A model generated the notes under the pieces. That model saw only the letters and a list, made by a program, of their open reading frames with translations. It was not told where the DNA came from and ran no database searches. DNA of 64,000 bases, taken from assembly GCA_977017575.1 (NCBI GenBank), contig CDRNVI010000196.1, positions 1-64,000 of the forward strand. Direction: 5' to 3'. Source of the DNA: Paramoeba atlantica (lineage: Eukaryota > Protista > Discosea). Positions 1 through 32,589 of the stretch are shown piece after piece. The position numbers and the translations under genes were made by a program. The first letter of the stretch is position 1. Each line of letters opens with the position of its first letter.

Positions 1-2951
1 TTTATTTTACTTTATTTTATTTAATTTAATAACCTTTTTATTTTATTGTATTTACCTTTGGTTTATTGAACAGTACAATCCCTGATTGCAAGGGGCACAA
101 TCAGACATCAATTACATTTGAGAATGATCCAAGTTTAGGTGAGCTGACACTCCAACATGTTGAGGTAATAATTTTATTATTTAAAATTTTATTATTTTTT
201 TTTAAATTTATTTTTTGTTCTTGAATTGAAAAATCCAAAACAAAAAAATAAAATTAAAAATTATTTTATTCAATTATTTTGATAGGTTTCGGTTCATATC
301 CGACATCGAAAACCAGGTTATTTTTCTTTCTCTTCTCTCTCTTCTCTCTCTTTTTCTCTCTCTTTCTCTTCTCTTTTGAAACCTCAAATTCAAAAAAAGG
401 GCATATGGAAATTGTTTTAATCTCTCCTGATGGAACAAGAGCAACTTTATTGACGGTTTTTTTCTTTTTATTTCTTTTTCTTTTCTTTTTCTTTTGAAAT
501 CATTTTTAATTTAATTTTTCCTTTCTTTCTTTCTCTTTCTTTTCGATGATAGCCAAGGGCAGCAACGTATAAACCCTCCTCGAAAATCACAGTTTGTTTT
601 TCACTTTATTTTCACAATCTTTTGATTTTGTTTCTAAAAGTTATTTTTTGTATTTAGGTTGATAGTGTGTTGGTTCTTGAGACACAATATTCTCAGCAAG
701 AGGAGGAAGAGGTCTTTTTTTTTTTTGGAATTTCTTTTTCACAATTTTTTATTTTTTTATTTTTTATTTTTATTCTTTATTTTAATTCTCAACAAAAATC
801 AATATGATTAAGATTAATGAGATGAATTTTAAAAAAAAGATTCCAATTTATTGTCTTTTCTTTTTAGATGAAATTTGAAAATGTGGTATTTGTGGATGCT
901 CCGCGTTGTTGTCCTGCTGAAAAGTTTTCTTTTCTTTCTTTTCCTCTTTCCTATTCTTGTTTTTTCTCTTTTCCTTTCGTTTATTTTTAATCTTTTTTCA
1001 GTTGTGAATTCCCATTATTTGAGAATACTGCTGTTGTTGTTGAACCAACACCAATTTGTTCACTGGATCAACAAGTTTTTTCTCTCTTTCTCTTTCTGAT
1101 TTGAATTGAATTAATCTCTAACCTTTTATTTTCTTTCCTCTCTCTTTCCTCTCTTTCCTCTCTCTTTCCTCTCTTTCCTCTCTCTTTCCTCTCTTTCCTC
1201 TCTCTTTCCTCTCTTTTCCTCTCTCTTTCTTCTCACTCAAAAAAAGATAACAAAAATCATCGATCAGTTCGATCAATCAGAAGAAGAAGGAAATCTTGCA
1301 ATGATAATTTTCAAAAGAGTGGATGAACACGCCGAACAAAAAAAATTAGATCCTTATTCTGTTCCTGTTTTGGCTGTTTCTTTGGACGTCTTTCGGATAT
1401 CTTTGGAGAATTTGGTGGAAAATCAACAATCTCATGGTTTGTGTTTTTTTAAATTGCTTTAAATTTGTTTGTTGGAAGAAAAGAAGACTCTCTCTTTTGG
1501 TTTTTGGTTTTTCTAATTTATTTTCTTTCTCCCTTTTTCAGATGTCTTATTATCTCCAGACATAAAATCCCGCCCACAAGATGGAGAAGAACATGTATGC
1601 ATTCTAAATCTTCCAAACAAAAAAGCACAATCTTCAAATCATCTCTGATTTCCCTTTTTTTTTATAGTTGACATGGAAGTTTACCAGCACTTTCTTTTGG
1701 GGTACAGATCCAGAGGTAAAGACTCATCCTCACTTTTTTAGTTACAATCTTGATTTTTTTGACAGAGAAGAGAATTGATCATTTCTATTTCCAGGGAGAG
1801 TGGAGTCTCATGATGTCGGATATGTACTGTTATTATGCCGTATCCTCTCTCCTTCCTTTTTCACTTTCTTTTCTCTCTGGAGAGACATCTCCAAAATTTC
1901 TGTTTTTCTCATTTTTTTTTCAGGGGAAATTGCTCGATGGGCAGATTAATTTCTTCTTTGGTCCCAAAATGGTTCCTGTGCCAAGCCCAAGTCCAAGTCC
2001 ATCTCCATCTCCAACTCCAACTCCAACTCCAACTCCTACTCCTACTCCCACTCCAACTCCAACACCAACACCACCCCCAACTCCTTCTCCTTCTCCTGTT
2101 CCATTCCCATCACCAACACCAACTCCTTCTCCAACACCAACACCAACACCAACTCCTTCTCCAACACCAACACCAACTCCAACACCAACACCAATTCCTT
2201 CTCCTTCTCCAACTCCAACTCCAACGCCAACTCCAACTCCAACGCCAACTCCAACTGAGGTTGTCTTTGCTTCTCCTTGTCGTGCTGAGCGGGAATATTG
2301 TCAAACTTGTTCTCAGGTTGTTTTCTTTTTTCTTATTTTATAAATAAATTTTTCTTTATTTCTTTATTATTTTTTTTTTTTTGGTGTTTTTGAGAGTTTT
2401 ATTTTTTGTTTTCATTCTCGTATGATTCACTTTTTTTCTAGTGCTGTGAAGATTTATTTCCCTTTGAGGTTTATTTTCTCTTTCTTTATTCTTTCTTTCA
2501 ATTGATTTTAATAATTACCTTTTAAAAGTGTGGAGTTTGTATTGAAACAAAATGTGCACAACCAGAGCAAAAACATACATTCCGAAATACATTCTTTGGT
2601 TCCTTTCTTCCCTCTCTCTTTTTCTCCTTTTTTTTTTTTTTCAATTTCTCATTTTTGTTTTAAAAAAAAAGCTTTTCTTCTTGTCTTTGTTCTTGTGGTG
2701 ATTGGGATTCTCCTTTATGGTTTTTTTTTACTTTCTTTCTCTCCATATTTCTTTCTCTCCACATATTCTTTCTCTCCATATTTCTTTCTCTCCATATTTC
2801 TTTCTCTCCATATTTCTTTCTCTCCACATATTCTTTCTCTCCACATATTCTTTCTCTCCACATATTCTTTCTCTCCACATTTTCTTTCACCACATTTCAT
2901 TTCTCTCCACATTTCATTTCTCCAGACCAAAAAACTAAATCATAAAAATCT

Positions 2952-13989: not shown

Positions 13990-16618
13990 TCAAGAATAAA
14001 GAAAACTATTACACATAGAATAACAAACAGCCATAAAAAAGAAAGTTTGCCCCAAAAAAAGAGAGACCATGACCCGTGGCGATTTTTCCATCATTTGAGA
14101 GAAAAGATTTTGAAATGCTTCAAATTCTCCTTCTTCTTCTTCTTCTTCTTCTTCTTCATCATCTTCTGATATTTCTTCTGTGTATTCTTCTTCTGTGTAT
14201 TCTTCTTCTGTGTATTCTTCTTCTGTGTACTCTTCTTCTGTATATTCGTCTTCTTCTTCTTCTTCTGTGTACTCTTCTTCCTCTGTGATTTCTTCTATGA
14301 TTTCTTCTGAGAATTCTTCTTCTTCTCCTTTTTCTTCTTTCATTTGCGATGTTTCCTCCCCTTTCAATTCCTCTTTGTCTCTCTCCTCTTCCCCTTTCTC
14401 TTCTCTTTTCAATTCCCCTTTTTCTTTCTCCTCTTCTCCTTTTTCTCTTTCTTCTTTCTTTTCTTCCAGTTTCCCTATTCTTTCATTTTCTGGTCCAACT
14501 TTTCCAGAGATGAATTTCTCTTTCCCTTTCATCTTACTTACAACAACACCTTCTTCATCATCATCATCTTCTTCTTCTGATTCTTCTTCAATAACTTCAA
14601 ATTTTTCTTCTTTTCCCAATCTTAATGTCAATCCATATTTGATCACTAAAAATTTTGTGAGAAGAGAAAAGAAGAGAAAGAAAAAAGGGAAAGAGGAGAA
14701 AGGAGAGAAGAAAAAATCGAACCATAGTACCAAATAGTGATTTGCGCAAATATTATCATCATAGCAAAAGTAACTAAAACCAAAAAAAAAATCAACCAAA
14801 AAGAAAAAAGAGAGAAAGAGAAAGAGAAAGAGAAAGAGAAAGAAAAAAGAGAAAGAAAAAAGAAAAAAAGAAAACAAACCAACAAAACCATTCAATTTTT
14901 TGTCTTTAACAGGACACCTCTCTTTTATACAACCCATACACTAAAAATAAAACATTTTGTTAGCTTTTTTTAAAACCTTTTTTTTTTGTTTATTTCTTAC
15001 AATTTGAAGAAATGGAAAATAAAAAATTGGATTGGGAAAAAGAGAGAAATGAAAAAACAAAACTTGATCGAATGGAATATTAAAGCAACACTGTCAAAAG
15101 AACGATCAAATGAGAATTGAACAATCAAAAGAAAATTAAATTAGAAAAAATATTAAAAAATAATTAAAAAATAGTAATAAAATAAATAATAAAATTGAAC
15201 ATGTTCACAAGTTTGACAAGTTTCCCCGACTTGGCAAGGACCATCATAAAGAATGGGAGTAGGAGAAGGAGAAGGAGAAGAGAGAGGAGAGGGAGAAGGG
15301 GAAGAGAGAAAGAGAGGAGAGGGAGAAGGGGAAGAGAGAGGAGAGGGAGAGGGGGAAGGGAGAGGAGAGGGGGAAAGAGAGGGGAAGGGAGAGGGAGAGA
15401 GAGAGGGGAGAGGAGAGGGGGAGTGAGAGGGAGAGGGGAGAGGAGAGGGAGAGGGGAAAGGAGAGGGAGAGGGGAGGGGGGAAGGAGAGGGGGAAGAGAG
15501 AGGAGAGGGGGATGGAATTGGAGAGGGGAATGGGGAAGGGGCTCCCCATGTTGGAGTTGGGGTTGGAAGAGGAAAGGGAGAGGGAGAAGAAGAAGGAAAG
15601 GGGAATGGAGAGGGGATTGGAGAGGGGAGAGAGGGGAGAGAGGGAGAGGGGAAGGGGGATGGAGATGGAAAGGGTGAGGGATGGGGGGAGGGGGAGGGGG
15701 AAGGAGAAGGTTCTGTTTTTAGTTTTGCTCCTAGGAATAGTTTGAGTTCTATTCGGGTTACTTGTCCCTGTTTTGTTTGGTTTTTTTTTTTAGAAGGAGA
15801 GAGGGAGAAGAGAGAGGGGAGAAAGAGAGAGGGGAAAAGAGAAAAAGGAAGGAAAGAAACATACCGAATCTTGACACAAAGTATCAGTGACTGTGACAAC
15901 CCAATTTCCCTAAAAAAGAAAAAGGAACTTAACAAAAGAAGAGAGAAGAGAGAGGGAGGAGAAAGAAAAGAGAAAGAATTACCACAAAACGTTCACCCCA
16001 AAAGAATGGGGTTGTGAATTTTGGTTTCCACTAAAAGAAAAAAAAATATTATTCTTTTATTCTTAATAATTTTTGAATCATAAAAAATATCAATTATTCT
16101 TAAATAAATTCTTTTTTTTTGTGTGTGTTTCAAAAAGAAAAGAAATCATAAATTATGATTCCAAAAAATAATAAAAAAATGGCATACTGAATTGGAGTCT
16201 AGTTTATGTTTGAGTGGAAATTTTCCTTCTGGTGTTAATTTCACATCTGTTCCAATAATTAAATAATAATTAAATGAAAATCAAAGATAAATTTTGAAGA
16301 AAAATAAAAGCCTAAAAAGAATAAAAGAATAAAAACAAAACAAAATAATAAAATAAAAAATTAAAAATTTAAAAAAACCATGTGTCTGAACATCACCAAC
16401 CAAATTCCTCAAAATAATTCGAAAAATCTCAGAATTAATCCCCAAAATAGGAAAAGAATAGAGCTCTAAATCCTTAAATTTTGGATGACTTTTAAAAGAT
16501 GGAAAAATTATCATTTTGAGATCATTTTCTCTTTTTGTATTGGTGAAAGATTTTGTGACTGTTGTGATCTGTGAAAGAAAAGAAAGAAAAATTAAAATTG
16601 CACTCAATAAAAATAAAT

Positions 16619-16680
<62 letters not shown>

Positions 16681-17077
16681 TAAAAATAAAAATAAACTTG
16701 TTCATCAAGATCACAATCCTCAGTGGGATTTATGACAACAGCAACAGCCCCTTCTATCATTGTCAAACATCTACAAAAAAAAAATGAGAAAGAAAAAGAG
16801 AAGAAAAAGAAAAAAACTAAAGAAAAATGAAAAAAAAACAAAACAAATAAAGAAGAAAAAAAGAAATAATAATAAGAAAAAAAAAAAATCAAAACTCTCC
16901 ATCTCTTTTCTCTCTCTCTCTTCTCTCTTTCCTATCTTCAGAAGGTGGTTCTTCATTCACATTTTCAACCATTTCTGGTTCTGGTTCAAGTTCTGATTCT
17001 GATTCTGGTTCTGGTTCTGATCCAGAACAACAAGGAGAAGAGATAAAGACAAATCGAACTCCATTAAAATCAACCTT

Positions 17078-17108
<31 letters not shown>

Positions 17109-19504
17109 GGAAGAGAAAAAAGAGTGAATCAAAAAAATTAAAGAATAAACATTTCAAAAAAACAATTTAATAAATAAATAAATAAAAAAAAAAATATCAG
17201 GAAACTGTTTGTTGTGGAAGACGAGAATATTGTGTATCCAATACCAATGATTCATCAACCTAATAAATAATTCAATAAAAAATAAAATAAATAATTCATT
17301 AAAAAATAAAATAAATAATTCATTAAAAAAATAAAATAACTAATTCATTAAAAAAATAAAATAAACTATTCATAAAAAATAAAATAAATCCATTAAAATA
17401 AAATAAATAATTCATTCATAATAATTAATTGATAAGAAAAGAGAAAGCAAAACCGTAATTCTGGTAGTTTGAGAAAATTGTTCTCCTCTTGGCTATTCTT
17501 TCCCATTAAAAAAGACAAAGAAAAAAGAGAAAAGAAGAAAAGAGAAAGAAAAGAGAAAGAGAAAAGAAACTGTCATCAAAACGACTTTTGTTCCAGAAGG
17601 AGATGTCAAAGAAATTTCCAATTCATCTTTATGAGGAAAAAATAAAATAATAAAAAAATTAAATTTATTATTTTTAATGACTCAAATATTTTTTTGAAAT
17701 ATTGAAAATGTTTTAAATTTTTTAAAGTTGATTTTTTTTCAAAAGGAAAGAGAAAGAGAAAGAGACCAGGAGCAGAATGGCGAATGTCAAATGACACCTA
17801 ATAATCAAATAATCTTAGAAAATAATAATACAACTTATTTTATTCAACAACATGAAAAACAAGAAGAAAAGAACAAAAATAAGAATAAAAAAATAGGTTT
17901 CAAAATAAAAAAAAAAATAATTTCATTGAAAAATTAAATCATTAAATAAAACAAAAAAAAGAACAAAATTTGAACAAAAAAAATTAAATTAAAAAAACCT
18001 CAATTTGCTGAAGTTCTAAAGCTTGGTGCTGATTTTGATTGATTTTCAGTGTAGACTCCATTTTTCCTGTACAATCTGGAATATTTCTACAAAAACAAAT
18101 GAATAAAATTCTGAACATTGACTTAGATTATTCTTCAGAAAAAGGAAGAGAGAGAGAGAGAGAAGAGAAATGAAAAAAGAAAAAAGAAAAAAGAAAAAAA
18201 GAAAAGAAAAAGAAAAAAGAAAAGAAAACTTTCTTGAAGAAGAACGAACAACTTGACTTGCAGGAGCATGAGAAATCGGAGAATGATATTTTATTAAATG
18301 GATCGCTTTTGTTGGATTGACTAATCCATATCTATTTTTTTTTATTATTTATTTTTTTTTATTTATTTTATCATTTTTAATATTATTGATGACCTTATTT
18401 TTTTTCTTTGTTATGATTTTTTATTAGATTGAATTTTATTTTTATTATTCTTATTATTTATTATGAAATATTTAAGATGATAAAAAAAGAAAAAGAGAAA
18501 ATAAAAAAAATAACCCAAAATCGTGACTGAACATCCGACCAACACCATTTTGTTGCCAGCCACCTCCTCCAGGTTGTTCAATTACTATTCAATTATATTA
18601 TTATTTCTTTTTATTTTATTTATTGCTTCATTTTTTCCATATTTTTATTTCATTTTCTTATTTTTAGTAATTTAGATAAAAATAACCTTCCGCAGTAGAC
18701 AAGAGAGCGAAAAAAACATCAGCTGCCTTCAAATCCCCGTTTTGCTTCAAAATCAAAATCAAAATCAATTCATTTTAGATAATTTTTCTTTTTTTTCATT
18801 TAAAAAATAATTGTGCAACACACAAAATTAAAAATCAAATTAAAAATAAAAATAAATAAATGAATTTAAAACCTCAAGGAGAAGCGCAGAAACCCCAGCA
18901 ACAACGGCAGCACTTGCCTAAAAAAAAAATGAATAATGAATAATTATGAATGATTTGTTCTCTTTTTCAAAAAATAAATATTGAAAAATAAAAAGAGATT
19001 TCTTTTTTGGAATTGTTTTTTAACAATTCAAAATAAAATAAAACCTGAGAGCCATCCAAACTTAAATCAGAGCACATTCGATCAAATGTTGTTTTCAGCT
19101 TTCAAAAAACAAATTTCAGAAAGAGAAAAGAGAGGTAATTAAGTAAGAAAAAAGAAAAAGAAATAGAAAAAAAGAGAAGGGAGAGAAGAAGAAGAAAAAC
19201 CTGAGTTGGTGCAGAAACGAGATAGCTTGCACAAAAAGGAGAAGAACCAACTTTTCCGTCTCTTGTTACTTGACTGATACTCATTATCTATTTTTTGGAA
19301 GAAGAGAAAAAGAAATAAATCATTTTGAAAAAATATAAAAATAATAATAAATATCGAGCTATTTTGAATCATAATAACAACAACAATAATAATACAATCT
19401 AAAAAATAAGAAAGAAAACAAAATAAGAACATCACGCTGAGCATTCAACGTCTGAGTCTAACAATTGCCCATCATCTCTCTATCATCATTAACAGAACAA
19501 CAAC

Positions 19505-19549
<45 letters not shown>

Positions 19550-19658
19550 CTAATCTAAAAAAAAAAGAAAAAGAATAATACATCACGCTGAGCATTCAAA
19601 GTCTGAGTCTAACAATTGCCCATCATCTCTCTATCATCATTAACAGAACAACAACAAC

Positions 19659-19700
<42 letters not shown>

Positions 19701-22700
19701 CTAATCTAAAAAAAAAAGAAAAAGAATAATACATCACGCTGAGCATTCAACGTCTGAGTCTGACAATTGCCCATGATATCTCTATCATCATTAACAGAAG
19801 AAATAGCGACAATTCCTTTTCGATGTCTTCCATCTTTCATATGATGGTCGTATGAATTTTCGGTTAGTGGTGATACTGCTCCGAATGTATATAAATGGAT
19901 GTCAATTTGCTGGGAGTTTGGGGGAGAGAGAGGAGAGAGAAGAGAGAGAGAGGAGAGAGGAGAGAGAGAAGGAGAGAGAGGCCGAGGAGAGAGGATGAGA
20001 AAGAAAATATTTTTTTTTGATTTTTTTGAGAGAAAAAGAAAAGAGAAGAGAAAAAGAAAAGAAAAGAAAGAAAACAGATGTTTGGGCAAAGAGGAGAGAA
20101 TCCGTCTTCTCAGGGCGATCCAGACTCTCAGCTTCCAATATCAGTAACCTTGCTGAAAAGAGAGAAAGAAAAGAGAGGAGAAAAAAATGTGAATCAAGAA
20201 GAGAAAGAGAGAGAGAGAGAGAGAGAACCTTCATTTGCAACCCCAACAGAACAAAAATTATTATTTCCAGTCCCAACAACCAAAGACGCCACTATTTTTC
20301 ATAAAAAGAGAGAAGAGAAAAGAAAAGAAAGAGAGAAAAAGATAAGAATTTCCTTCTCCTTTTCTCATTTCCCCTTCTCTTTTCTCTTTCTGTATTTTTT
20401 CCTTCTTTTCTTTTCTCTCTCTCTTTCTTCTTCTCTCTCTTACCTGCGGTTCCAAAGGGACGAGAAGAATCAAATTCTGAATTTTGTCCAAGATGAGAAT
20501 TCGTCTTATCCAAACGGCCAGTCAAGTCTTCGGAAAGAGAAAGAAAGTGAATAAAAAGAGAAGAAAAGAGAGAAGAGAGAAGAAAAGAGAGAAAAGAGAG
20601 AAGAGAAAACCTCGATTGCCTTCGTCTGCTGCAAGAACATTAACTGCAATTCGAACACCTATTTTGAAAAGAGAAGAAGAAGAAGAGAAGAGAAAAAGAG
20701 TTTAGAGTTTTGATATTTTTCTTTCATATTAAGCAATTAAAATACCATTGCCACTCAATCCTTCTTCATATTTCCCCTTTTAAAAGAAAGAGTTAATTGC
20801 AAAGAAAAATAATAAACAAAAGATTCAACAATTAAAAGAAAAGAAAAGAGATCTTGATATTATTTGATGAAAAAAATTCTTTTCTATTCAAAAAACAATA
20901 AAAAAAAATAACAACAATAAAAAAACAAACAATTTTTTCAACATACAAAAAAACCAACCTTCAAGTCAAGACCAAACTTTTCACCACTGTGCAAATGCCA
21001 CTGTTCAGAATAACGAGGATCATAATAATTAAAGTATGCCAAAGAACCGCTTGGTTTATCGGATGGTTTCATAAAAGAACCTAGAGAAAATCTTATTTCT
21101 GCTGATTTTAAAATTCCCTGTTTTTTTTGTTTTAGAGGAGAGAGAGAGAAGAAAGGGATTTGAGAGGAAAGAGAGGGATTTTTTTTTGAGATTCAATTGT
21201 GTGAAAGTGGTAAAAGAAACGGAAGAGAAAGAAAGAGAAGGAGAAAGAGAGAACTCCATCTCCGCATAATGTATCACGAATGGATAATTTCCAAATTCCC
21301 TATTCAAAAAAAAAATTAAAAATCAAGAGAAAGAGAGAAAGAGAGAAAAGAAGAAGAAAAAAAGAAACAAAGAAGAAAATAACCTTTCTGGCTTCTCCCA
21401 AAAAGAAGTGACTCCCCATGACCCAATTTGTCATCTTTTGAAGAAATAAATTCAAAAATTAATTCCAAAAAAATTCGAATATCAATTTAATGAAATATTC
21501 CAAAAAAAAATCAAATCGAAATACAAAAAATATTTCAATTTTTTAACAAAAAAAAAACAGAGAATGATTCCAAAAAAAAAAGATAATTATTCTAAAAAAC
21601 AAAAAGAAAAAACAATACAGGAGGAAAAGAAGATTTGATAGGTCGAGTACCATCAGAAACCACTTTCACATCTATTAATATTAAAAAAATAAATAATAAT
21701 AATTATTATTCTCTTTTCTTTTCTCTTCTCTTCTTTTCTTTATTTTAAAAACCTTCTCAAATTTCCTGGAAAACAAATCAACCAATTTTTTTAAAAGAAA
21801 TTTATAAATTAAAATCAAAAAAAAAAAAAGAAAAAAAACCAAAAATCCGAGAACGAAACTGACTCAAAACCAATTCCGGAAAAAAAGAACAAGAACCAAA
21901 AACAGGAATTTCAAGAGAAAGAGAAGAGATCTCATCTTCTCTTTTGTTATCTGGTAAAAGAAATATGAAAAATAAGAGAGAGGAATTTGGGTCTGCTTTT
22001 TTCTTTTCAATGATGATGTTGACCTATGAGGAAAAGAGAGAGAGAGAGAGGAGAAAAGAGAAAGAAGAGAAATGGAGTGAAGAATGAGAAAGAGAAAAAG
22101 TTACTTTGCCAAAAAAATGAAAATGAAAAAATTCAAAAAAAAATAAATTCCTTCTGAAATAAATCAAAAGAAAAAAAGAAAAAAAAAGAAAAAAAAGAAA
22201 AAAAAATAAATTTGTAACTTGAGTCCCAAGAGAACAATATGAAGGTCTCAAAAGAACTCCTGTTTTTTCACGAAATTTTATTTTACAACTAAAAAAAAAG
22301 GATTCTTAGAAAAAAGAAGAGAGAGAGAGAGAGAAAGAAAGAAAGAAAGAAAAAAGACAAAACTCTCTCATTCGACAACAAGATAACTGAGCTTCAGAAA
22401 AATAAACACCCTTCCAATTTTGCTAAAAATAAGAATAAAAAAACAAATTAATATTAATATTTTAAAAATATTAATATATCAATAATTTAATAAGAAATAA
22501 TTATTATTCAAGATTAAGAAATCTATAAAAATAATAAAATTTGTGAAGTGAAAATTTCTTTTTAAAAGTTCATTTTTAAAATATTTTCAAGAAAAAAATA
22601 AAATAATTTTTGAAAAAGAAAGAAAAATACAGCTTTTTCTCGCATTTTCCAATTAATAAACCAGAAATTTAATATTGTTTTCTCCCCAATCTGTCATCAG

Positions 22701-25700
22701 AAAAGAGTTTAAAAAGAGTTTAAAAAAAGAAAAGAGGGAAAAAAAGAGAAATAAAAACAATTAAACGAGGTGAGTCTGAAGGGAGAGCTCCTCTTTGCTA
22801 TTTGAAGAATTGAGAAAAAGAGACAAGAGAAAGAGACAAAAAAGAGAGAAAGAAAAGAAAGAAAGAGAGAGAAAATACGGTCATTAAAATAGATTCAGTC
22901 CCAGAAGGAGAAGTTAACTTCACTTCCAAGTCACCTTGAAAGAAAAAGAAGAGAAAACTTTCGAGTTATTATCTTTCTATTTTCTCTCTCTCTCTTTTGT
23001 GCTTCTTTTTTCTTTCTTTTCTCTCTTATCAATGAAAATACCTGGTGACGGATGCTCAATATCTACACTCACCTAAAGTGAAAAATGAATTCATCAAAAG
23101 AAATAAATGGGAGAGAGAGAGAGAAGAGGGGGGAGAGAGAGGAGAGGAGAGAGAGAAGAACCTCAACATATTGAATAGGGTCAGGACTCGAGGTTCTCAT
23201 CTCAACAGTTGACAATGCGGTTTTTCCCACACAATCTAATATTTCGCTATTTTTGATTTTGTTATTATTATGTTATTATTATTATTGAAAAAGAAACTCA
23301 AATATCCTTTTCTCTTTTCATTTTTTCATTTTTTTTTCAACCAAAAAGTAATTTTTCCTTTTTTTAGATCTCAAATAACAAAAAAAAAAAAAGCTCTTCA
23401 AACCAAGATGGAAAAAATGCCTTGACATGTTTGACACTCCCAGAAATAGTCTCAGTATTTTCATCAACAAATTCTAGCGCTTTAGTCACGTTTACTGCCC
23501 CAAAACTAGATTTGATTTTTAAAAAATGATTTTGTTAATGAAAGAATTATCAGAAAAACTGAAACAATTTATCAAAAATCAGAAAAGAGAAAGAAAAGGA
23601 AAGAAAAAGAAAAGAAAAAGAAACCCAAAAAGATGGCTAATAGAAAAACCAGCTGCATTTCGTTGCCAATCTCCTTCTTTTATCTTTGTTGCGGTTGATG
23701 CAAATATATATTGTATGTCAAACCATGCTAATGCTGGTTTTTTCTGTTTGGTTGAAGAAAGAGAGAGAGAGAAAAGAGAGAAGGAGAAGGGAAAAGGGAA
23801 AGGGAAAGAGAAAGAGAAAAGAAGAAAAAAAACAAATTATGAGAAAATGAGCAAGAGAAGAGAGAAAAGAAAGAGAGAAACTTCAAGAAGAAGAGCAGTA
23901 GCCCCTGAAACAAGAGCAGAAGCAGCCTTTTTAAAAAAAAGAATAAGAAAAATATACTTTGTTCTCTTTTCTCTTTTCCTTTTCCCCTCTTTGAATCTCT
24001 CTTCTTCTTCTCTCTCCTTTTCTCTCTCCTCCATTCTCCTCTCTCTCTCTCTTCTCTCTTTCTTCTTCTCTCCAAAACCTGATTTCCTGGGAAATCCATC
24101 CGAGCACACTCAGCATTAAAAGTTGTTTTAACATTTGTTGGAGCAGAAACAAGATATTTTGAACAAATTGAACTTGGGACGCCTTGCTCTGTTATGTGAC
24201 TCACAAGTATCACCTTTAGAGAGAGAAAAGAGAAAGAGAGAAGAGAGAGAAGAGAGAGAAGAAGAGAAGGGGGAGAGAGAAGCAAGAGAAATTGATTTCA
24301 AATGAATCAATCAATTGAATCAGAAGAATACAAGAATAAAAAATAAAGAATAAATAAGAATCAAATTAACCTCTGGAAGAACATTAAAAGCATCTTGGTT
24401 ACAATTTGGAGAGGCATAAATATCATCAGAAATTGATCCAAAAACCACAATTCCTTTTCCCTATTTTATTTATTTTTATTTGGTGAATATTTTATTAATT
24501 ATTTTTAGTCTTGAATTTCATAAAAGATTTTTTTTCTTTTTCTTTTATTTACTTCAAATTAAATAATTTTTAAATCAAAAATAGGTTTGATGAATCAAAA
24601 GAAAAAGTGAAAGTGAAAAAGAAAGAAAGAAAACATCTCTTCCAGAGTGTAGATCATGCTCCAACTTTCTCTTCACATCACTCTAAAAAAAGGAAACAAA
24701 AAACAAAGAATGAGAAAAACAAATCAAAAAGAGAGAAAAAGAGAAAAGAGATAACTGAAAGAAGAAATCCATCATGAGAAAGCCCATGAGAAAACCAATA
24801 AATATCAACAACCTAGTCCAAAAGAAAAGAAAAAAGATGATTTTTAGGAGTGAAAAGAGAGAAGAGAAAGAGAAAGAAAATTTCGCCAATCTCCAAAAAA
24901 AAAAAATAATAAAAATAATAAATAATAAAAAAATTACATTATTAGCCACTTCAAACAAAAGAAAATCTTCATGAGGAGATTGTTCCCAACCAGTTATTAA
25001 CACTAAATTTGCTGTTACTTGTTAATCAGCTTCATTTTTTTGAAAGAGAGAAAGAGAGAGAGAAGAGAGAAAGAAAAGAGAGAGAGAGAAGAGAGAGAAG
25101 AGAAGAGAGAGAAAGAGAAAGAGAAAGAGAGAGACCTTGTGGCGCAACACCCAAAGAACAAAAATGGTTATTACTTGCAAGAATCAAAGATGCAGCTATC
25201 AAAAAAGAAAAGAGAAGAAGAAAAGAGATGAAAAAGAGAAGAGAAGTGAGTTTTTTTCTTGCAAATCTTCTTCTCAAGAATTTTCTCTGTATTTTCTCAA
25301 AAAACTTTCGAGAAAGAGAGAAAGGAGAAAGAGAAAGAGAAAAACAAACCAGCAGTTCCTCTTTCCAAGGCAAAAATATTATCAGAAACTGCATCAAGTG
25401 AAGAATGTTCTTTATCTAATCTCCCCACAAGATCTAAGAGAATAATAAATGAAAGAAAGAAAGGAAAGGAGGAAAAGAGAAATCTCTCTCTTTGCTCTCT
25501 CTCTCTTTCCCTTTTTAAATTCAACTCAAGCTCAAGAAATTAAAAGAAATGAAAGTTTTAAAATTGAATGAATAAAGAATCAAAAAATCAACCATGATAA
25601 AATTCAATTCATTCTCGAAAAAAGAAAAAGAAAAAGAAAGAAAAAAAACCAGGATTTGTGACATTTGCAATGGGAACAGAAACACCAACTGAAACACCTC

Positions 25701-26214
25701 GACCAAAATATCCAACATTCCATGCCCCCTTTTTTTGAAAAAGAGAAGAGATTGAGAAAGAGAAGAAAGAGAAAAGAGAGAGAGAAGAGAGGGAGAAAGA
25801 AGAGAGAGAAGAGAGGGAGAAAGAAGAGAGAGAAAGAAAATAGAAGAGAGGAAAGAGGAGAAGAGAAGAAAAAGAAAAAAGCAAAACTTGAAGTTGAAGA
25901 GAATTTGGTTGGTCATGAAATTGCCATTGCAAAGGGAAAAGAGGATCACTAAATCTCTTCTTTTCAGCTCTCTTTTCCACATTTCTTTTCTTTTCTTCTT
26001 CTTCTTCTCTTTCTTTTCTTTTCTTCTCTTTTCTTTCTTTTCTATTTTCTTCTCTCTTTATTTGCTCTCGATCCTGACTGTCAAGAATTTCTTTTGAAGA
26101 AGAAGAAGAAGAAGAAGAAGAAGAAGAAGAAGAAAAACTCTTCATACAAAAGAAAAGAAAGAGAGAATAAACTACCACAACAAAAAAGAAAACAAACTTT
26201 TTCTTCATCCCCAT
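13990..26214 (-). CDS. Large kexin/furin-like pseudoprotease with two tandem S8+P(PA-insert) modules, Pro/Ser stalk, Cys-rich region, TM and acidic tail
   Basis: Signal-like start at 26214 and a KKR|[13 protein letters not shown] maturation-site pattern. Module 1: [50 protein letters not shown] domain [23 protein letters not shown]. Module 2 starts in exon 21117-20959 ([12 protein letters not shown]) and continues [53 protein letters not shown]. The stalk spans 15240-15710, the TM is [17 protein letters not shown] and the acidic tail ends at 13990. Confidence 0.8.
19431..19800. repeat. Triplicated ~151-bp unit spanning an exon 3' end and splice donor of the pseudo-convertase
   Basis: catcacgctgagcattcaa.gtctgagtct.acaattgcccat... 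occurs at 19733 (true exon end), 19582 and 19431, separated by (AAT)n tracts. Both extra copies carry CAG->TAG. Confidence 0.9.
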
Positions 26215-26872
26215 TTCAAAAAATCAAAAAAATAAATTAATTCTCAAAAAATTGACTTTGTCAAGAAGAAAAAAGATTTTTGGTGACCCTTTTTTGTGAA
26301 GGAAATTGAGAGAGGAAAAAGACGTGCGGCTGTTGCGAGCGTCCCAAAGTGACCACTGCGGAGAAGGTGATTGGTTTTTGTGACTCTTTTCTGAGAGAAA
26401 GAGAGAGAGAGGAAAGACGTTGCGAAGCGATCACAAAAGATTGAGCACTTCCGCAAAGTCAAAAATAAGGAAACAAGGTTTCAAAAATCTGGAGGTGGTG
26501 AGATAAACTTTGTTTGAAGATGGGAGAGGTTAAGGTTGGAAAACGAAGAGGGAAGAGAAGAGGTGGTTCTGTTTTTGGTTCGGTTTCTTTCCTTCTCTTT
26601 TCCTTCTCAATTCTCCTCTCTCGTTCACACCACGCAAAAAAGATAACTCCAACATCCGACCGATATTACTTATTTAGTAAATATTTAGGTCACTATTTTT
26701 GGCCATCTTATTGTTTTGGTTTTGCCCACTGGACGAAGAAAGAGAGGAAACCAAAGAAGAAGAAAGAGAGAGGAAGAAACCGAGAAGAGAGTACTGTTTG
26801 GTCCAAAACTAAAAAGGCAACTGCCCCTTTTTGTTCAAAGAGAGTGTTTCAGAGAGGAGAGAAGAGAGAAAA

Positions 26873-28511
26873 ATGGAAGAGAAGAAAACCGAACCAAGCA
26901 CGGAGGAGGACGCAGAGCTCGTTGCTGCAATTGAAAAGGGAGATGAAGAACTTGTGAAAGAGATTCTCCAAAAAGAAGAAATTGATGTTAACTTCAAAGA
27001 CAAGGTTTCACAAAAAATTGTTATTCAGAAGAGTTGAGTCTTTCAAAAGCTGGACTGGATTTTTGTTTCTTTTTTTGATTAATTGTTTTTTTTAAGGATG
27101 GAATGACCCCTCTTCACTGGGCTGCTCAGAATGATTTTGAGAAAGGTGTGAAGATTTTGATTGAAAAAGGAGCGAATGTTGATCTTCAAAACGAAGTTTT
27201 TTTGATTTTTGATTTCTTTTTTTTTTATGTGTTTTTTGATGTTTTTCTTCTGATTTGGTTGTTTGGTTTCTCAAAAACAAGAATTAACTCTTGTTGATTT
27301 GTTGATGTTTTGATGTTCTTTTTGTTAAAGGACGGAAAGACCCCTCTCCACTGTGCTGCTGAGAATTATTCAGAAGAAGTGATGAAAATTCTGGTTGATC
27401 ATGGGGCCAATCCTGATATTCGAGATGCAGTTTTGATTTTATCTTTTTTTTTTTGGTCTTTTTGTTTGTTGATTGTTCTCTTTTTGTTCAAGGTTGGATG
27501 GTCCCCTCTTCTCTGTGCTATTTCTGACGATTCAGATGAAGTTGCGAAATTTCTTGTCGAACATGGAGCTGATGTTAATCTTCAAGACTCCAATGAAAGG
27601 GTTCAAAAAAAAAACAAATTTCATGAAAACAAACTTCATCTTTTTTAAACAAATTTCATTTTAACTTCATTTTTCTTTTTTCTCAGGTGGGATTTGCTCC
27701 TCTTCATTTTGCTGCAATTTCTGAGAACCAAACAATTTTAACAAATCTTCTTGAACATGGAGCTGATGTTGATCTTCAAGACGATGTTTTGATTTTTTTC
27801 TTTTTTTGTTTGTTTTTGAGGAACAGAGAGAGCAATCCAATTGTGTTGAAAAATAATTTTAATTTTAATTTTGTTGATTTGTTCATTAGAAAGGATTTTC
27901 CCCTCTTCATGTGGCTGCTGACAATTGCTTTGAAGGAATTGTGGAAATTTTGGTTGAACACGGAGCTAAGATTGATCTTCAAAACAAAGTATTTTGTTTT
28001 TATCTAATTGATGTTATTTTGATGTTCTATTTTTGTTTTGTTCATCAAAAAACTAACTTTTTTTTTGTTAATTTTGTTTGTGTGATTTACAGGGTGGAAA
28101 TACCCCTCTTCATTTGGCTGCTAGGCAGAGTTTTCAAGAAGGTGCAAAAATTCTTGTTGAAAATGGAGCAAAGATTGATCTTCAAAACAAAGTTTTTTTT
28201 TTGTCTCCTTTTTTGAAAGAGAGAGAGATGACGATGTTTATTTTTGGAGTGTTTCGAATGCTTGAATTGATTAACACCAATTCCTTGACCGAATTTTTTT
28301 GAACTCTTTTTTTTCTTAGGATGGGAAAACAGTCTTTGATGTTGCAAGAGATCATCGAATTGTTCAACTAATCAACCAATTGATGGTTTGATTTTTTTCT
28401 TTTCTTTTTACAATTTTCAATTTTTGATTTTTGATTTTTGATTTTTGATTTTTGTAGGAGAAAAATATCAAGCCAGCAAGAAAAAAACGAAAGCTAACTC
28501 CAAAGGGATGA
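26873..28511 (+). CDS. Ankyrin-repeat protein, one repeat per exon, C-terminal basic NLS-like tail
   Basis: MEEKK...ELVAAIEKGDEELVKEIL, followed by exons DGMTPLHWAAQ, DGKTPLHCAAE, VGWSPLLCAIS, VGFAPLHFAAI, FSPLHVAAD and GGNTPLHLAAR. Ends EKNIKPARKKRKLTPKG*. Confidence 0.85.
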
Positions 28512-29290
28512 GAACAAAAAAAAAAGAAGACCAAAAAAAAAATTCTTTTTCTCTTGAATGTCAAAAGTGAAAGTTCTTCTCTGTTCCTTTCCTTCTCTTG
28601 GAACCAAGACAGTTCCTTCTCTTTCAATTATGATGTCCCTCTGAAGAGGACACCACAATCTGTGACAGATTTCTCTGCCAGATTGGTTTGATTTGATTTG
28701 ACCAACTTCGAAGTTTTTCAGTTGGGGAGGCATTTCTTTTTCGGTTTGGCTCTGGATTCTTTCTTCTGTTGGAGAGGATTCTTTATTCCGTTTTTCGTTT
28801 TCGGTTCCTCGTTCAACATTCCGAAAAACGAATTCAAAGTTCTTCGAAAATTCAAAGTCGGGAAATCACAAAATTCTCAGAGATGATGAAATTCATTTGG
28901 ATCAAATCTCTGATTTGACAAATGACACACAGAAAGCTGAAAAACAATTGGTTGAGGATATTTCTTCTTTTTTAAAAACCCGAACGGATATCGGTAAGGA
29001 AGATTGACATATTTGGACAGACAAATTTGGATTTTTGGGGAGAAGCGGTGTTCCCTTCAAAAGTACCTGACGAAAAGGGTAAAAATGGGGTTGCGGCGAC
29101 CTCCACAATCAAAAAATTCCAAAATCTTGGGGAACTTTGGGGGTCCCTGTTCTTGATTGCCGGCCTCTTTGGCCTCTCCATACCCTCCATTCAAATTAAC
29201 TATGAGAAAGTTCCATCAGGGTGTCACAGCCAAAAAAAATTCAAACCAGAAAAAAAATTGAAAGGAAAAATTCCGAATTCCAAAATTCCA

Positions 29291-31089
29291 ATGACGCGGA
29301 TCGTTCTTTGCCTTCTCTTCTTTTTCTCGTCTCTCTCTCTCCACGTCCTGGGTTCGTCTCATTCTGAAGCACCCGGAACTGCCAAAATTCCAAGCGCCGA
29401 TGCTGTTGATTTCTACATGTTTCGATCCTACGAGGATGACCGAGAGGATTACACAACTTTTATCTTGAATGCCTATCCACTCCAGGACCCGTTTGCTGGG
29501 CCAAACTATTTCGCGTTGAGTGACCAACACTTTTATCAATTCCACATCGACAATGACGGTGATGCAGTCTCGGATATCGACATTTCTTTTTACTTTGGGG
29601 CTCAGTTGGGAGGAGAGGAGTATCAAACACCCTTCGACCCGGAGTTCTGTGATTGCAATTCTGGTACCGTACCAGATGAAACCAAACACCATGGACTTAC
29701 CGTTGATATTTTGGATGCTGATGGTGTGTCTATCAATCATCCCCAATTTGTCCCATTGAAGTTTATTGGGCCAGTGAGCGGACCAGACGATGCAACCCTC
29801 AACTTCAAAGAGACTTTCCAAATCCGATGGACGCAAGGTGGTGTGGATACTGAGATCGAAAATCCGAGTGGAGGCTTCTCTTTCCCAAAGCCATTTGACT
29901 ACGCTGGAGAGAAAACTTTTGGGGATGCTGAAACTTATGAATCGTATGCTCGTTCGTTCATCCAGAGCTTTTCGATTCCTAATTGCGCAGAACAAGGAAA
30001 AGTATTTGTGGGTCAGAGAAAAGAGCCATTCCATATCAATCTCGGGAAAATCTTTGATTTGGTTAACTTTATCCCAATTCAAGACTTTATTGAGCAGAGC
30101 GATAATAATAATGATCTCAGATTTATTAGTACCACTTCTCTTGTCATCGAGTTGCCAACCTCGTGTGTTTTGGGTGCCTCAGACGTTATTGGAGCTTGGA
30201 CAACGGTTAACCAACTTTGTCATGCGGGTGCGGATCATGTTGTTGGAGAGCAGTTCTCTCGATTGGGTAATCCTCTTGTCAATGAGTTGGTGATTGGTTT
30301 GGAAAAGAAAAAGGACTTCAATCAACAACCTCCAACAGACGATGCAGCCTCTTTCTTGGACTTTGTTCAATTCCCCTCCTTCCCAGCGATTTTGGATTTG
30401 TTGTTCAGAGATGCGGTCAATGATGCAATGGGCACTGATATTAGCAATCTTGCTCCTAACAACTTACCAAGGAATGATTTGGTCACTGTCTTCCTCACCG
30501 GAATTGCAGGGCTCAACATGCCTCCTGATCCAAACTTTATGGCTTCCGAAATGATGCGATTGAACACAACTGTCCCTCCAACAAAGAGGCAAAATCAAGA
30601 ACATTTGGGTATGTTATTTTCTTTTTTTTTCTTTCTTTTTTGCTTGTTTTGAGATATTTTTCTTGATTTTTTGCTTCAAATGAAAATTTTTCCTCCTCCT
30701 TCCTTGTTGGGTGCTGATTTTTCGAAAATTGAATAGGTTTGATTGGTGGAGATAGTGCTGGATTCCCGAATGGACGTCGACCTGGAGATGATGTGGTCGA
30801 TATTGTGTTGCGAGTGGCAATGGGAGTTCTTTGTTATTTAACTGATTTATGTGAAGAAGGCAATGCGCCTGTAGGAAATGTCCTGTTTACGGATGGAGCC
30901 CCTCTGACAGCGAGCGATTTTGATGATGAATTCCCTTATTTAAGGACACCAGTTCCAGGGTCCCCTTTCCCTGGGAGTGGGACTCCGTCTCCGTCTCCAT
31001 CCTCTTCCAGTGCAAATCTGTTGTCAGTCTCGACAAGCCTCTTTCTTGTTGCTCCTCTTTTGGCGATTTTGAATTTGTTCTGGTTTTAA
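29291..31089 (+). CDS. DUF4331 family secreted protein with probable GPI-anchor signal; one intron (30609-30736)
   Basis: Signal peptide followed by SSHSEAP...DAVDFYMFRS (DUF4331 SSHREAP..D.TD.YAFRS). Also YQFHIDNDGD, VFVGQRKEPF, QFSRLGNPLVNE and GFPNGRRPGDDVVDI, ending in a Ser-rich spacer plus hydrophobic tail LLSVSTSLFLVAPLLAILNLFWF*. Confidence 0.85.
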
Positions 31090-31443: not shown

Positions 31444-32589
31444 TCATTTTCTTGCTGGTTTGATATATTTCCCCTAATAAGAATAATAATAAAATGAATT
31501 AGATTCACAAAGAAAAGAATATTGACACACAAAAAAAAAGAAAAATAAAACCATCAATTTGTTGAGCAGTTCAAGAATTTCTTCATCATCTGTCATGTCA
31601 AAGACTGTATTCCCATCCTAACACAAAAAAGAAAAAGAGGTTCCACAAAATCAATTCAATTGAATATTCAAATTCAGACTCAAACCTCAATAAAAAAAGA
31701 TAAAAATCAAAATACTTTGTTTTGAATATCAACATTGGCTCCGCATTCAACCAAAATTTCTACAACATCTTTATGAAAATTGGTCACAGCAGAGTGAAGA
31801 GGGGTCCATCCCTCCTAACAACAAGTCAATAAAATCAAACAAAGAAAAGAAAATGAGATTATATTTGATATCCAACAGCCCCCCTCCTTTGATCTTTTAC
31901 ACACCCCAATCTCAAAAAATAAAACACAAAATAGAACATCAAAAAGAAGGACAGAGCAATAAAAAAATAAAAAAAAAAATAAAAAATAAAAAATACATTG
32001 TTTTGGATATCAATCTTTGCTCCCTGTTCAACAAGAAAGTTCACAATTTCTTTAAAACCATTGTTCGCAGCAAAGTCAAGAGGGGTATCTCCATCCTAAC
32101 AAAAAAAAAACTCAAAACATACCAAAATAGAAATCAAATATCAAAAATAAGGTCAAAAAAAAAAAGATAAAATCAAATTACATCATTTTGAAGATTAATC
32201 TCAGGTCCATGTCTGACCAAATTTTTCACAATTTCTTCAGAACCCCCCCAAACAGCACAATGAAGAAGGGAATCTCCAACCTAACAACAAATTAACAAAA
32301 TCAATAAATCAAACACAAAAGAAAAGAAAAAGAAGATTTCCTCCTCCTTTGATATTTTTCGAAAACAATATTGGAAAAAAAAAAGAAGAAACTTCAAAAA
32401 AACAAGAATTTCATTTTTTGAAACAAAAAAAACATCAAAAAACAAAAGAGAGATTCTAAATACAATTATAAAAATAACCTTATCTTTGCAGTTAATATCA
32501 ATTTTTTGGGTTTGGAGAATCTCTTGTACAAGTTCTTTATCTTCTTTTTCAATCGCTTCAAAAAGCCTGTTTTCTGAGTCATCCGCCAT
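31444..32589 (-). CDS. Ankyrin-repeat protein (tandem array copy A)
   Basis: MADDSENRLFEAIEKEDKELV, then 99-nt exons VGDSLLHCAVW, DGDTPLDFAAN and EGWTPLHSAVT, then DGNTVFDM. Ends GKYIKPARK*. Confidence 0.8.

What the first reader, a model, noticed from the sequence alone, without database searches (positions are those of the whole stretch)
13990..26214. Double-headed kexin/furin pseudoprotease: two S8 modules in one chain, catalytic triad lost in both
Seen: exon 21117-20959 carries the last P-domain strand of module 1 ([13 protein letters not shown]) straight into the start of module 2 ([12 protein letters not shown]), so both modules are one ORF. Against furin, the Asp motif SILDDG becomes GVSVPI and AVNVLA. 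The His motif RHGT becomes ERGT (25360-25362) and PFGT (20454-20456). The Ser motif GTSASAP becomes GNQAASA (24079-24081) and GSQASAA (19045-19047). Established: S8 catalysis needs Asp-His-Ser. Inference: the shared Ser->Gln in diverged modules with intact frames and structural motifs points to a selected non-catalytic function, such as a receptor, scaffold or substrate trap for dibasic peptides. The KKR maturation site would need cleavage in trans.
Basis: partly seen in the sequence, partly recalled or inferred. Interest (0 to 1): 0.75.

Follow-up and report, generated by a model that had tools for sequence, protein, structure and literature searches.

The report
Two-headed dead kexin membrane protein
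An amoeba gene of about 52 small exons encodes one membrane-anchored protein with two furin/kexin-like heads, both lacking the residues needed to cut; it is one of at least 25 inactive kexin relatives in a genome where only one working kexin was found.

Summary
On the minus strand, 26214-13990, a chain of GT..AG introns in consistent phase gives one open reading frame with two kexin-like units, each a catalytic-type domain plus a P domain. They are joined inside one exon (21117-20959).

The acid, base, oxyanion and nucleophile positions read Val/Arg/Asp/Gln in head 1 and Val/Phe/Asp/Gln in head 2. Three of the four replacements are shared and use the same codons, so inactivation most likely came before the internal duplication. 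Codon positions between the heads differ in the order 2 < 1 < 3, the pattern of selection on the protein.

I corrected the gene model. Each P domain carries five more exons, an insert of 142 and 185 residues, giving 52 exons and 1742 codons.

The protein has a signal peptide, no recognisable prodomain, a Pro/Ser stalk, a Cys-rich piece, a membrane helix and an acidic tail. The acidic pockets that bind basic residues are gone, so a dibasic-peptide trap is unlikely.

The same genome holds a second two-headed dead kexin and an array of about 20 single-headed ones. The scan had already noted a dead kexin beside the live one on another contig.

There is no transcript evidence. The joined model was not searched or folded.

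The parts
13990..26214 (-). Whole gene: 52 predicted exons, 5229 coding bases, 1742 codons plus stop
   Evidence: Script check of splice sites, phases and open frame. Introns are 68-216 nt (median 129), with one of 445 nt.
25888..26214 (-). Exon 1: hydrophobic signal-like N-terminus, Ser run, Lys/Glu-rich low-complexity segment, then the start of catalytic-type domain 1
   Evidence: Maximum Kyte-Doolittle 19-residue mean is 2.45 at residue 6. Pfam gives only sub-threshold, low-complexity-type hits.
25954..25962 (-). Lys-Lys-Arg just before the conserved start of head 1, at the place where the active paralog has its multibasic propeptide junction
   Evidence: Cleavage was not tested.
23625..25728 (-). 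Head 1, catalytic-type domain (exons 2-11)
   Evidence: Alignment to the active kexin of contig C139. The exon at 23743-23625 hits only kexin (E 0.024) and furin in the PDB.
21079..23505 (-). Head 1, end of the catalytic-type domain and P domain (exons 12-23 plus the first 13 codons of exon 24)
   Evidence: PF01483 hit at 22876-22938. Hits to family loci at E 7e-5.
21619..22690 (-). Insert 1: five exons (426 nt, 142 codons) inside P domain 1
   Evidence: Same order and phases as insert 2. With these exons the 1.3-kb 'intron' disappears.
20959..21117 (-). Bridging exon 24: end of P domain 1, an 18-residue linker, and the start of catalytic-type domain 2 in one open frame
   Evidence: Its second part matches the start of the active kexin at E 0.001-0.01.
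18515..21024 (-). Head 2, catalytic-type domain (second part of exon 24 to exon 35)
   Evidence: Exon sizes and phases match head 1.
15729..18331 (-). Head 2, end of the catalytic-type domain and P domain (exons 36-47 plus the first 13 codons of exon 48)
   Evidence: PF01483 hit at 17571-17636. Hits to family loci at E 9e-5.
16188..17259 (-). Insert 2: five exons (555 nt, 185 codons) inside P domain 2, including an acidic low-complexity expansion
   Evidence: Pfam finds no family.
25675..25677 (-). Head 1, catalytic Asp position is Val; the next residue (furin Asp154) is Pro
20636..20638 (-). Head 2, catalytic Asp position is Val in the ungapped alignment; an Asp-Glu-Gly follows at 20626-20618
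25360..25362 (-). Head 1, catalytic His position is Arg
20454..20456 (-). Head 2, catalytic His position is Phe
24425..24427 (-). Head 1, oxyanion-hole Asn position is Asp
19787..19789 (-). Head 2, oxyanion-hole Asn position is Asp
   Evidence: Ungapped alignment to head 1.
24079..24081 (-). Head 1, nucleophile Ser position is Gln, last codon of exon 9
19045..19047 (-). Head 2, nucleophile Ser position is Gln, last codon of exon 32
15273..15713 (-). Stalk: 147 residues, 79% Pro+Ser+Thr
14889..15260 (-). Cys-rich piece: 8 Cys spread over the end of exon 48 and exons 49-50
14723..14773 (-). Predicted membrane helix (exon 51 plus the first two residues of exon 52)
   Evidence: Hydropathy and reading.
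13990..14645 (-). Acidic tail: 53% Asp+Glu with repeated Tyr-Thr-Glu-Glu-Glu units. The last 45 residues are hydrophobic, so the true 3' end is uncertain.
19367..19799 (.). 151-bp tandem repeat, 2.8 copies, that duplicates the 3' end of exon 30 together with the start of its intron. The extra copies carry TAG where the exon has CAG.

Best explanation
This is one intact, intron-rich gene for a type-I membrane glycoprotein. Its extracellular or lumenal part consists of two kexin-derived heads, each a subtilase-type domain plus a P domain with a family-specific insert. The heads sit on a Pro/Ser-rich stalk, followed by a small Cys-rich piece, one membrane helix and a very acidic cytoplasmic tail. 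Neither head can work as a serine protease: the base and the nucleophile are replaced in both, the oxyanion Asn is Asp in both, and the acid is Val in both on the ungapped alignment. The shared Val, Asp and Gln use the same codons, so the ancestor was probably already inactive when the unit was duplicated in tandem, and both copies were then kept under selection on the protein. Shown: the gene structure, the replacements, the constraint pattern, and membership of a large family of dead kexins. Inferred: the heads act as non-catalytic binding modules held away from the membrane, as a receptor, adhesin or cargo-binding protein of the cell surface or the secretory/endosomal route. Also inferred: the acidic tail directs trafficking, as acidic clusters do in furin.
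For: All 51 introns are GT..AG and in phase, and the frame is open over 1742 codons. Exon lengths and phases are the same in both heads: 84, 45, 102, 31, 56, 39 and 45 nt pairs, and 79 = 31+48. Catalytic positions are documented. Between the heads, amino-acid identity is 44% and nucleotide identity at codon positions 1/2/3 is 55/66/42%, against 26/27/34% expected from composition, while the introns are near shuffle level. Kexin kinship rests. For topology: signal-like N-terminus, stalk of 79% P+S+T, hydrophobic exon 51, tail of 53% D+E. For family context: the active kexin on C139 has Asp, His, Asn and Ser intact and one intron. A second two-headed dead gene lies on C176; there the P-domain end (PF01483 positions 53-85, E 0.013) and the start of a catalytic-type domain (E 1.6e-7 to the active kexin) lie in one uninterrupted 173-codon frame. 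About 20 single-headed copies lie on C156. In the three read in full the base and nucleophile positions are replaced; the other copies could not be scored at Asp, His or Ser.
Against: There is no transcript, protein or ortholog evidence. The exon model is mine, built by hand and checked only for internal consistency. Searches with single exons are weak: Pfam found nothing exon by exon, and three more exons found nothing in the PDB. The insert exons are only 23% identical between the heads and could be an optional cassette, since both sums are multiples of three. The 3' end is uncertain. The proposed binding role has no direct support.
Confidence: 0.6

Rival explanations
1. It regulates or partners the single live kexin. 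The dead heads would bind the active enzyme or its prodomain, or escort it, as many pseudoenzymes control their active paralogs and as CspA and CspC control CspB in Clostridioides difficile.
For: Only one locus with an intact triad was found in the genome. Csp pseudoproteases regulate an active subtilase and one of them is fused to it (PMC7200643; PMC12880746). The membrane anchor and acidic tail are those expected of a protein sharing the kexin/furin compartment.
Against: At least 25 dead copies for one enzyme is more than a regulator needs. The copies are highly diverged from one another. The window gene is not linked to the live kexin. No interaction data exist.
Confidence: 0.15
2. One reading: a non-cleaving trap or receptor for peptides with dibasic sites, using the preserved substrate groove.
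For: The overall fold-defining motifs are kept, and one acidic pocket residue (the furin Asp306 equivalent) survives in head 1.
Against: Of four acidic pocket residues (furin Asp154, Asp191, Asp258, Asp306; PMC2820236), head 1 keeps one and head 2 keeps none. The S4-side acid is also replaced in head 1.
Confidence: 0.07
3. It is a decaying or unexpressed pseudogene, open only because the model was built to avoid stops.
For: All catalytic residues are lost. There is no expression evidence. Only a 44-residue genomic ORF fragment of this locus exists in the 1.84-billion-protein library. A tandem duplication with stop codons sits in one intron.
Against: The DNA is about 30% G+C, where stops are frequent, yet 52 exons keep frame, canonical splice sites and matched phases in two copies whose third codon positions are almost saturated. 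Second positions are the best conserved.
Confidence: 0.07
4. It is two neighbouring genes, or an assembly join, rather than one chain.
For: There is an ATG inside the bridging exon (the 44-codon ORF at 21072-20938).
Against: The bridging exon is open across the junction. Head 1 has no stop before it. Head 2 would have no signal peptide. The C176 paralog shows the same junction in one long frame. The locus lies inside a 120-kb contig.
Confidence: 0.03

Closest known systems
Kexin/furin proprotein convertases (MEROPS subfamily S8B), e.g. yeast Kex2 and human furin
   Same: A subtilase-type domain followed by a P domain. Type-I membrane layout with a Ser/Thr/Pro-rich or Cys-rich spacer and an acidic cytoplasmic tail. 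A basic site just before the conserved start of the catalytic-type domain.
   Different: The base, the nucleophile and the oxyanion Asn are replaced in both heads, and the acid as well on the ungapped alignment. The acidic specificity pockets are dismantled. There is no recognisable prodomain. The unit is present twice in one chain. Each P domain holds an insert of 142-185 residues.
CspBA / CspC subtilisin-like pseudoproteases of Clostridioides difficile (PMC7200643, PMC12880746)
   Same: Two S8 domains encoded in one reading frame. Subtilase domains with replaced triad residues kept for a non-catalytic role in signal sensing and regulation.
   Different: Csp proteins are bacterial subtilisin-type proteins without a P domain. 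One head (CspB) is active. Prodomains are retained. The proteins are soluble spore proteins. Here both heads are dead, are of kexin type, and are membrane-anchored in a eukaryote.
PCSK9
   Same: A convertase relative whose physiological action on its target is binding, not cleavage.
   Different: From my own knowledge: PCSK9 keeps an intact triad and prodomain and cleaves itself once; it has a single head and no P domain of the kexin type.
Dead kexin paralogs of the same genome (C176 two-headed gene; C156 array; C139 neighbour noted earlier by the scan)
   Same: Kexin-type domain plus P domain with an insert, Pro/Thr/Ser-rich stalk and Cys-rich piece, and catalytic residues replaced.
   Different: They carry other replacements (for example Ser to Ala, Thr or Tyr). 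The C176 gene and the live C139 kexin have far fewer introns. There is no close similarity to the window gene. The C156 copies are single-headed.

Membership tests
Peptidase S8, subfamily S8B (kexin/furin) | Sequence homology of the subtilase-type domain | tested here: met
   Summed exon scores against the genome's active kexin are z 6.1 and 5.5. The significant exons map collinearly. One exon finds only kexin and furin in the PDB. Pfam exon by exon found nothing. The joined model was not searched.
Peptidase S8, subfamily S8B (kexin/furin) | P domain directly after the catalytic domain | tested here: met
   PF01483 hits both heads below its cut-off (19.7 and 17 bits; E 0.033 and 0.23). The same exons match P-domain exons of paralogs at E 7e-5 and 9e-5.
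Peptidase S8, subfamily S8B (kexin/furin) | Catalytic Asp-His-Ser and oxyanion Asn | tested here: not met
   Head 1 reads Val/Arg/Gln and Asp; head 2 reads Val/Phe/Gln and Asp. It is a homologue but not a peptidase. Caveat: head 2 has an Asp-x-Gly four residues downstream.
Peptidase S8, subfamily S8B (kexin/furin) | N-terminal prodomain acting as folding chaperone, removed at a basic site | tested here: inconclusive
   A basic site is present, but the roughly 60 residues before it are low-complexity Ser/Lys/Glu. Pfam gives only a sub-threshold hit to Peptidase_S8_N (22.4 bits against 30.5). Head 2 has only an 18-residue linker.
Peptidase S8, subfamily S8B (kexin/furin) | Acidic S1/S2 pockets for basic residues | tested here: not met
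   The equivalents of furin Asp154/191/258/306 (PMC2820236) are Pro/Ala/His/Asp in head 1 and Leu/Ser/Ser/Gln in head 2. The mapping is by motif and spacing, not by structure.
Csp-type fused subtilase pseudoproteases | Two S8 domains in one reading frame with at least one inactive | tested here: met
   Bridging exon 21117-20959.
Csp-type fused subtilase pseudoproteases | An active head fused to the dead one; prodomains kept; bacterial spore context | tested here: not met
   Both heads are dead, no prodomains are seen, and this is a eukaryotic spliced gene. The resemblance is in working principle only.
PA (protease-associated) domain, considered for the P-domain insert | Match to the Pfam PA model | tested here: not met
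   No Pfam family for the insert exons of the window or for the corresponding frames of the C176 and C156 paralogs. The ESM Atlas gave no usable hit. The resemblance was by eye only.

The most novel reading that the evidence does not exclude
This amoeba lineage has turned the proprotein-convertase fold into a large family of non-catalytic surface or secretory-pathway binding proteins: at least 25 genes against one live kexin found. Two-headed members, each on a mucin-like stalk, either arose more than once or were homogenised within each gene. This would be a class of eukaryotic receptor or adhesin not described so far.
Probability: 0.3. Interest if true: 0.75.

Novelty: new variant of a known kind. 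Interest (0 to 1): 0.6.

Why it matters
Pseudoenzymes are known to take on binding and regulatory roles, and the best-studied dead subtilases are bacterial. I found no paper describing dead kexin-type proteins, tandem kexin units, or their expansion in any eukaryote.

If these genes are expressed, they show that the kexin catalytic-plus-P-domain unit can be kept for long periods without catalysis and without a recognisable prodomain. That raises a testable question about how such a domain folds.

They would also give a candidate family of surface molecules in an amoeba group that the scan's earlier notes place near Paramoeba, whose members infect fish and sea urchins. I did not verify the organism myself.

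Tried and rejected
- Pfam on 20 single exons by reference found no subtilase or P-domain hit because the exons are too short.
- PDB sequence search on five exons: one found kexin and furin only, four found nothing.
- The large protein search with the 53-residue bridging exon returned only the locus's own 44-residue ORF fragment and three unrelated repeat proteins. So there is no annotated spliced protein, no transcript-derived protein and no ortholog in that library.
- The ORF fragment occurs on one ENA contig only, and the ENA accession appears in no paper.
- Genome-wide search with two exons found no close paralog or second haplotype.
- Rfam on the whole window found nothing.
- The idea that the P-domain insert is a PA domain was not supported.
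- A sedolisin-like mechanism was rejected. The oxyanion Asn is Asp, as in sedolisins (from my own knowledge), but there is no Ser nucleophile and no Glu at the base position.
- Alternative splicing that restores the triad was rejected. The Asp and His positions lie inside exons, and no GT exists upstream of either Gln codon.
- I could not decide whether the two-headed layout of the window gene and of the C176 gene has one origin. The comparable blocks are too short and give mixed signals.
- My first 42-exon model, with two introns of 1.3-1.4 kb, was replaced by the 52-exon model.
All later scripts used coordinates only.
Full report
WHAT IS THERE. The window is AT-rich eukaryotic DNA of about 30% G+C, with many short exons separated by short, low-complexity introns. 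The scan's earlier notes call the organism a Paramoeba-type amoeba; I did not verify this. The contig comes from ENA assembly ERZ24900291, contig ctg3967l, 120,878 bp.

Reading the minus strand, I built an exon chain and checked it by script. The final model has 52 exons, 5229 coding bases and 1742 codons. All 51 introns are GT..AG, all phases are consistent, and there is no internal stop. Introns are 68-216 nt (median 129), except one of 445 nt.

Exons, minus strand, high to low coordinate:
- 1-10: 26214-25888, 25728-25650, 25433-25350, 25195-25136, 25017-24938, 24812-24756, 24682-24635, 24460-24371, 24213-24079, 23926-23882
- 11-20: 23743-23625, 23505-23404, 23246-23162, 23072-23042, 22934-22879, 22797-22759, 22690-22631, 22422-22364, 22288-22219, 22023-21840
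- 21-30: 21671-21619, 21434-21384, 21299-21255, 21117-20959, 20776-20746, 20658-20611, 20527-20444, 20291-20229, 20152-20076, 19909-19733
- 31-40: 19287-19201, 19098-19045, 18917-18873, 18744-18687, 18584-18515, 18331-18230, 18086-17999, 17797-17767, 17626-17571, 17492-17454
- 41-52: 17259-17206, 17074-16896, 16770-16698, 16568-16379, 16246-16188, 16030-15983, 15909-15865, 15767-15201, 15090-15064, 14940-14889, 14773-14723, 14645-13990

Searches use the numbering of my first 42-exon model, so I cite coordinates here.

ONE CHAIN, TWO HEADS. It is a single open 53-codon exon. Its first 13 codons are the last P-domain strand of head 1, the next 18 are a linker, and the last 22 are the conserved start of a second catalytic-type domain. 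That second part matches the start of the genome's active kexin at E 0.001-0.01.

The two heads have the same exon plan. Exon pairs of 84, 45, 102, 31, 56, 39 and 45 nt have identical phases, and one 79-nt exon of head 1 equals 31+48 nt in head 2. This is what a tandem duplication of a multi-exon unit leaves behind.

KINSHIP WITH KEXIN. Single exons are too short for Pfam, so I used the genome's own kexins as yardsticks. Contig C139 carries a normal kexin with signal peptide, prodomain, a multibasic junction, intact Asp, His, Asn and Ser, a P domain and a single intron.
- Aligning each window exon to it gives summed scores 6.1 SD (head 1) and 5.5 SD (head 2) above shuffled exons. The individually significant exons fall at the expected, collinear positions.
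- Nine exons hit kexin-family loci of this genome at E<0.05.
- The Pfam P-domain model hits both heads.
- The exon at 23743-23625 finds only kexin (E 0.024) and furin in the PDB.

CATALYTIC POSITIONS. Alignment to the active kexin, ungapped alignment between the heads and a codon check give the following.

| Position | Head 1 | Head 2 |
|---|---|---|
| Acid (first Asp of the Asp-Asp-Gly motif) | Val | Val |
| Base (His) | Arg | Phe |
| Oxyanion Asn | Asp | Asp |
| Nucleophile (Ser) | Gln | Gln |

The shared Val, Asp and Gln use the same codons (GTT, GAT, CAG). Each Gln is the last codon of its exon, and no upstream GT could splice in a Ser codon. The other positions are internal to exons, so alternative splicing cannot restore a triad.

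One caveat applies. In head 2 an Asp-Glu-Gly lies four residues downstream of the aligned acid position (20626-20618). A shifted alignment would keep an acid there. The base and the nucleophile are missing either way.

SELECTION. Over 131 ungapped codons the heads are 44% identical in protein. Nucleotide identity is 55%, 66% and 42% at codon positions 1, 2 and 3, against 26%, 27% and 34% expected from composition. Homologous introns are near shuffle level. Third positions are almost saturated while second positions are kept, so the protein has been under constraint since the duplication. Because three of the four replaced catalytic residues are shared, the simplest history is inactivation first, duplication second, and long maintenance afterwards.

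CORRECTION TO THE MODEL. My first model left one intron of 1.3-1.4 kb in each P domain. Both contain five further exons in the same order and with the same phase pattern (0>0, 0>2, 2>0, 0>1, 1>0). They total 426 and 555 nt, both multiples of three. Pairwise alignment z-scores are 3.3, 3.1, 4.7, 1.7 and 3.8. Including them makes the intron lengths uniform.

The insert sits in the loop between the strand ending the first half of the P domain and the Trp-rich strand that follows. The active kexin has no such insert, but the dead paralogs do. I could not name its fold: Pfam and the ESM Atlas gave nothing, and a PA-domain resemblance was by eye only.

THE REST OF THE PROTEIN.
- The N-terminus is hydrophobic and signal-like.
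- About 60 residues of Ser/Lys/Glu low-complexity sequence follow, so there is no recognisable prodomain. Lys-Lys-Arg then precedes head 1.
- After head 2 come 147 residues that are 79% Pro+Ser+Thr, then 8 Cys in a short stretch, then a hydrophobic exon that fits one membrane helix.
- The tail is 53% Asp+Glu, with repeated Tyr-Thr-Glu-Glu-Glu units.
- The last 45 residues are hydrophobic, so the 3' end may be mis-set.

WHAT IT PROBABLY DOES. It cannot be a serine protease. Four acidic furin pocket residues recalled from the furin literature, all among the contacts listed in PMC2820236, are almost all replaced: head 1 keeps one of four and head 2 keeps none.

The layout is two globular heads on a glycosylation-type stalk, a membrane anchor and an acidic tail. 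It belongs to a large and diverged family. Both facts fit a binding protein of the cell surface or the secretory/endosomal route best. A role as partner of the single live kexin is the main rival.

FAMILY CONTEXT.
- C176 carries a second two-headed dead kexin. There the P-domain end and the start of a catalytic-type domain lie in one uninterrupted 173-codon frame. Its second head reads Thr, Pro, Asp and Ala at the four positions.
- C156 carries about 20 single-headed copies between 134 and 281 kb. In the three copies read in full the His and Ser positions are replaced; the oxyanion Asn is kept in most copies, and the rest could not be scored at Asp, His or Ser.
- Further hits lie on C139 (next to the live kexin, as the scan noted before), C169, C175, C155 and C209, and at 375-455 of this window.
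- No close paralog of the window gene exists.

WHAT IS KNOWN. The closest described system is C. difficile CspBA and CspC. These are subtilisin-type pseudoproteases, one of them fused in frame to an active protease, and they act as germinant sensors and regulators (PMC7200643; PMC12880746). Searches for kexin with pseudoprotease, for subtilisin-like pseudoenzymes with P domains, and for kexin in Amoebozoa found no description of dead or tandem kexin-type proteins.

LIMITS.
- There is no expression evidence. The 1.84-billion-protein library holds only a 44-residue genomic ORF fragment of this locus.
- The joined protein was neither searched nor folded.

Noticed in passing
window 19367-19799: A 151-bp unit repeated 2.8 times (93% matches) copies the 3' end of exon 30 together with the start of its intron. 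The two extra copies have TAG where the exon has CAG, so they cannot be read through. This agrees with another first-stage note on 'exon-edge echoes'.
   Followed up: partly
G000 contig C176, about 22000-28300, minus strand (L021, L042): A second two-headed dead kexin gene with far fewer introns. Its two heads resemble each other more than they resemble the window's heads, so tandem duplication happened twice or the heads are homogenised within each gene.
   Followed up: partly
G000 contig C156, about 134000-281000 (L005-L015, L024-L041): An array of about 20 kexin-like genes about 4 kb apart in both orientations, each with a P domain, a Pro/Thr stalk and a Cys-rich end. In the three copies read in full the His and Ser positions are replaced (Ser to Thr or Tyr). 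The oxyanion Asn is kept in most copies; the others could not be scored at Asp, His or Ser.
   Followed up: partly
window 375-455 (+) and about 1668-1720 (+): A weak P-domain hit (E 0.10) and, further on, a frame resembling the Trp-rich P-domain strand. This is possibly the 3' part of another kexin-like gene cut by the contig start.
   Followed up: no
window 28976-30649 (+): A single open frame of 558 codons without introns matches DUF4331 at E 1.4e-85. From my own knowledge this domain is mostly bacterial, so this is a candidate for gene transfer into the amoeba, or a foreign insert.
   Followed up: partly
window 27298-28300 (+) and about 31862-32095 (-): Ankyrin-repeat gene fragments flank the region upstream of the kexin-like gene (Ank at E 6e-19 for 27298-27645).
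   Followed up: partly
G000 contig C139, 231052-232870 (+) (L001): This is the only kexin locus found with an intact triad. It has one intron, against 51 in the window gene, a striking contrast in intron density between paralogs of one genome.
   Followed up: partly
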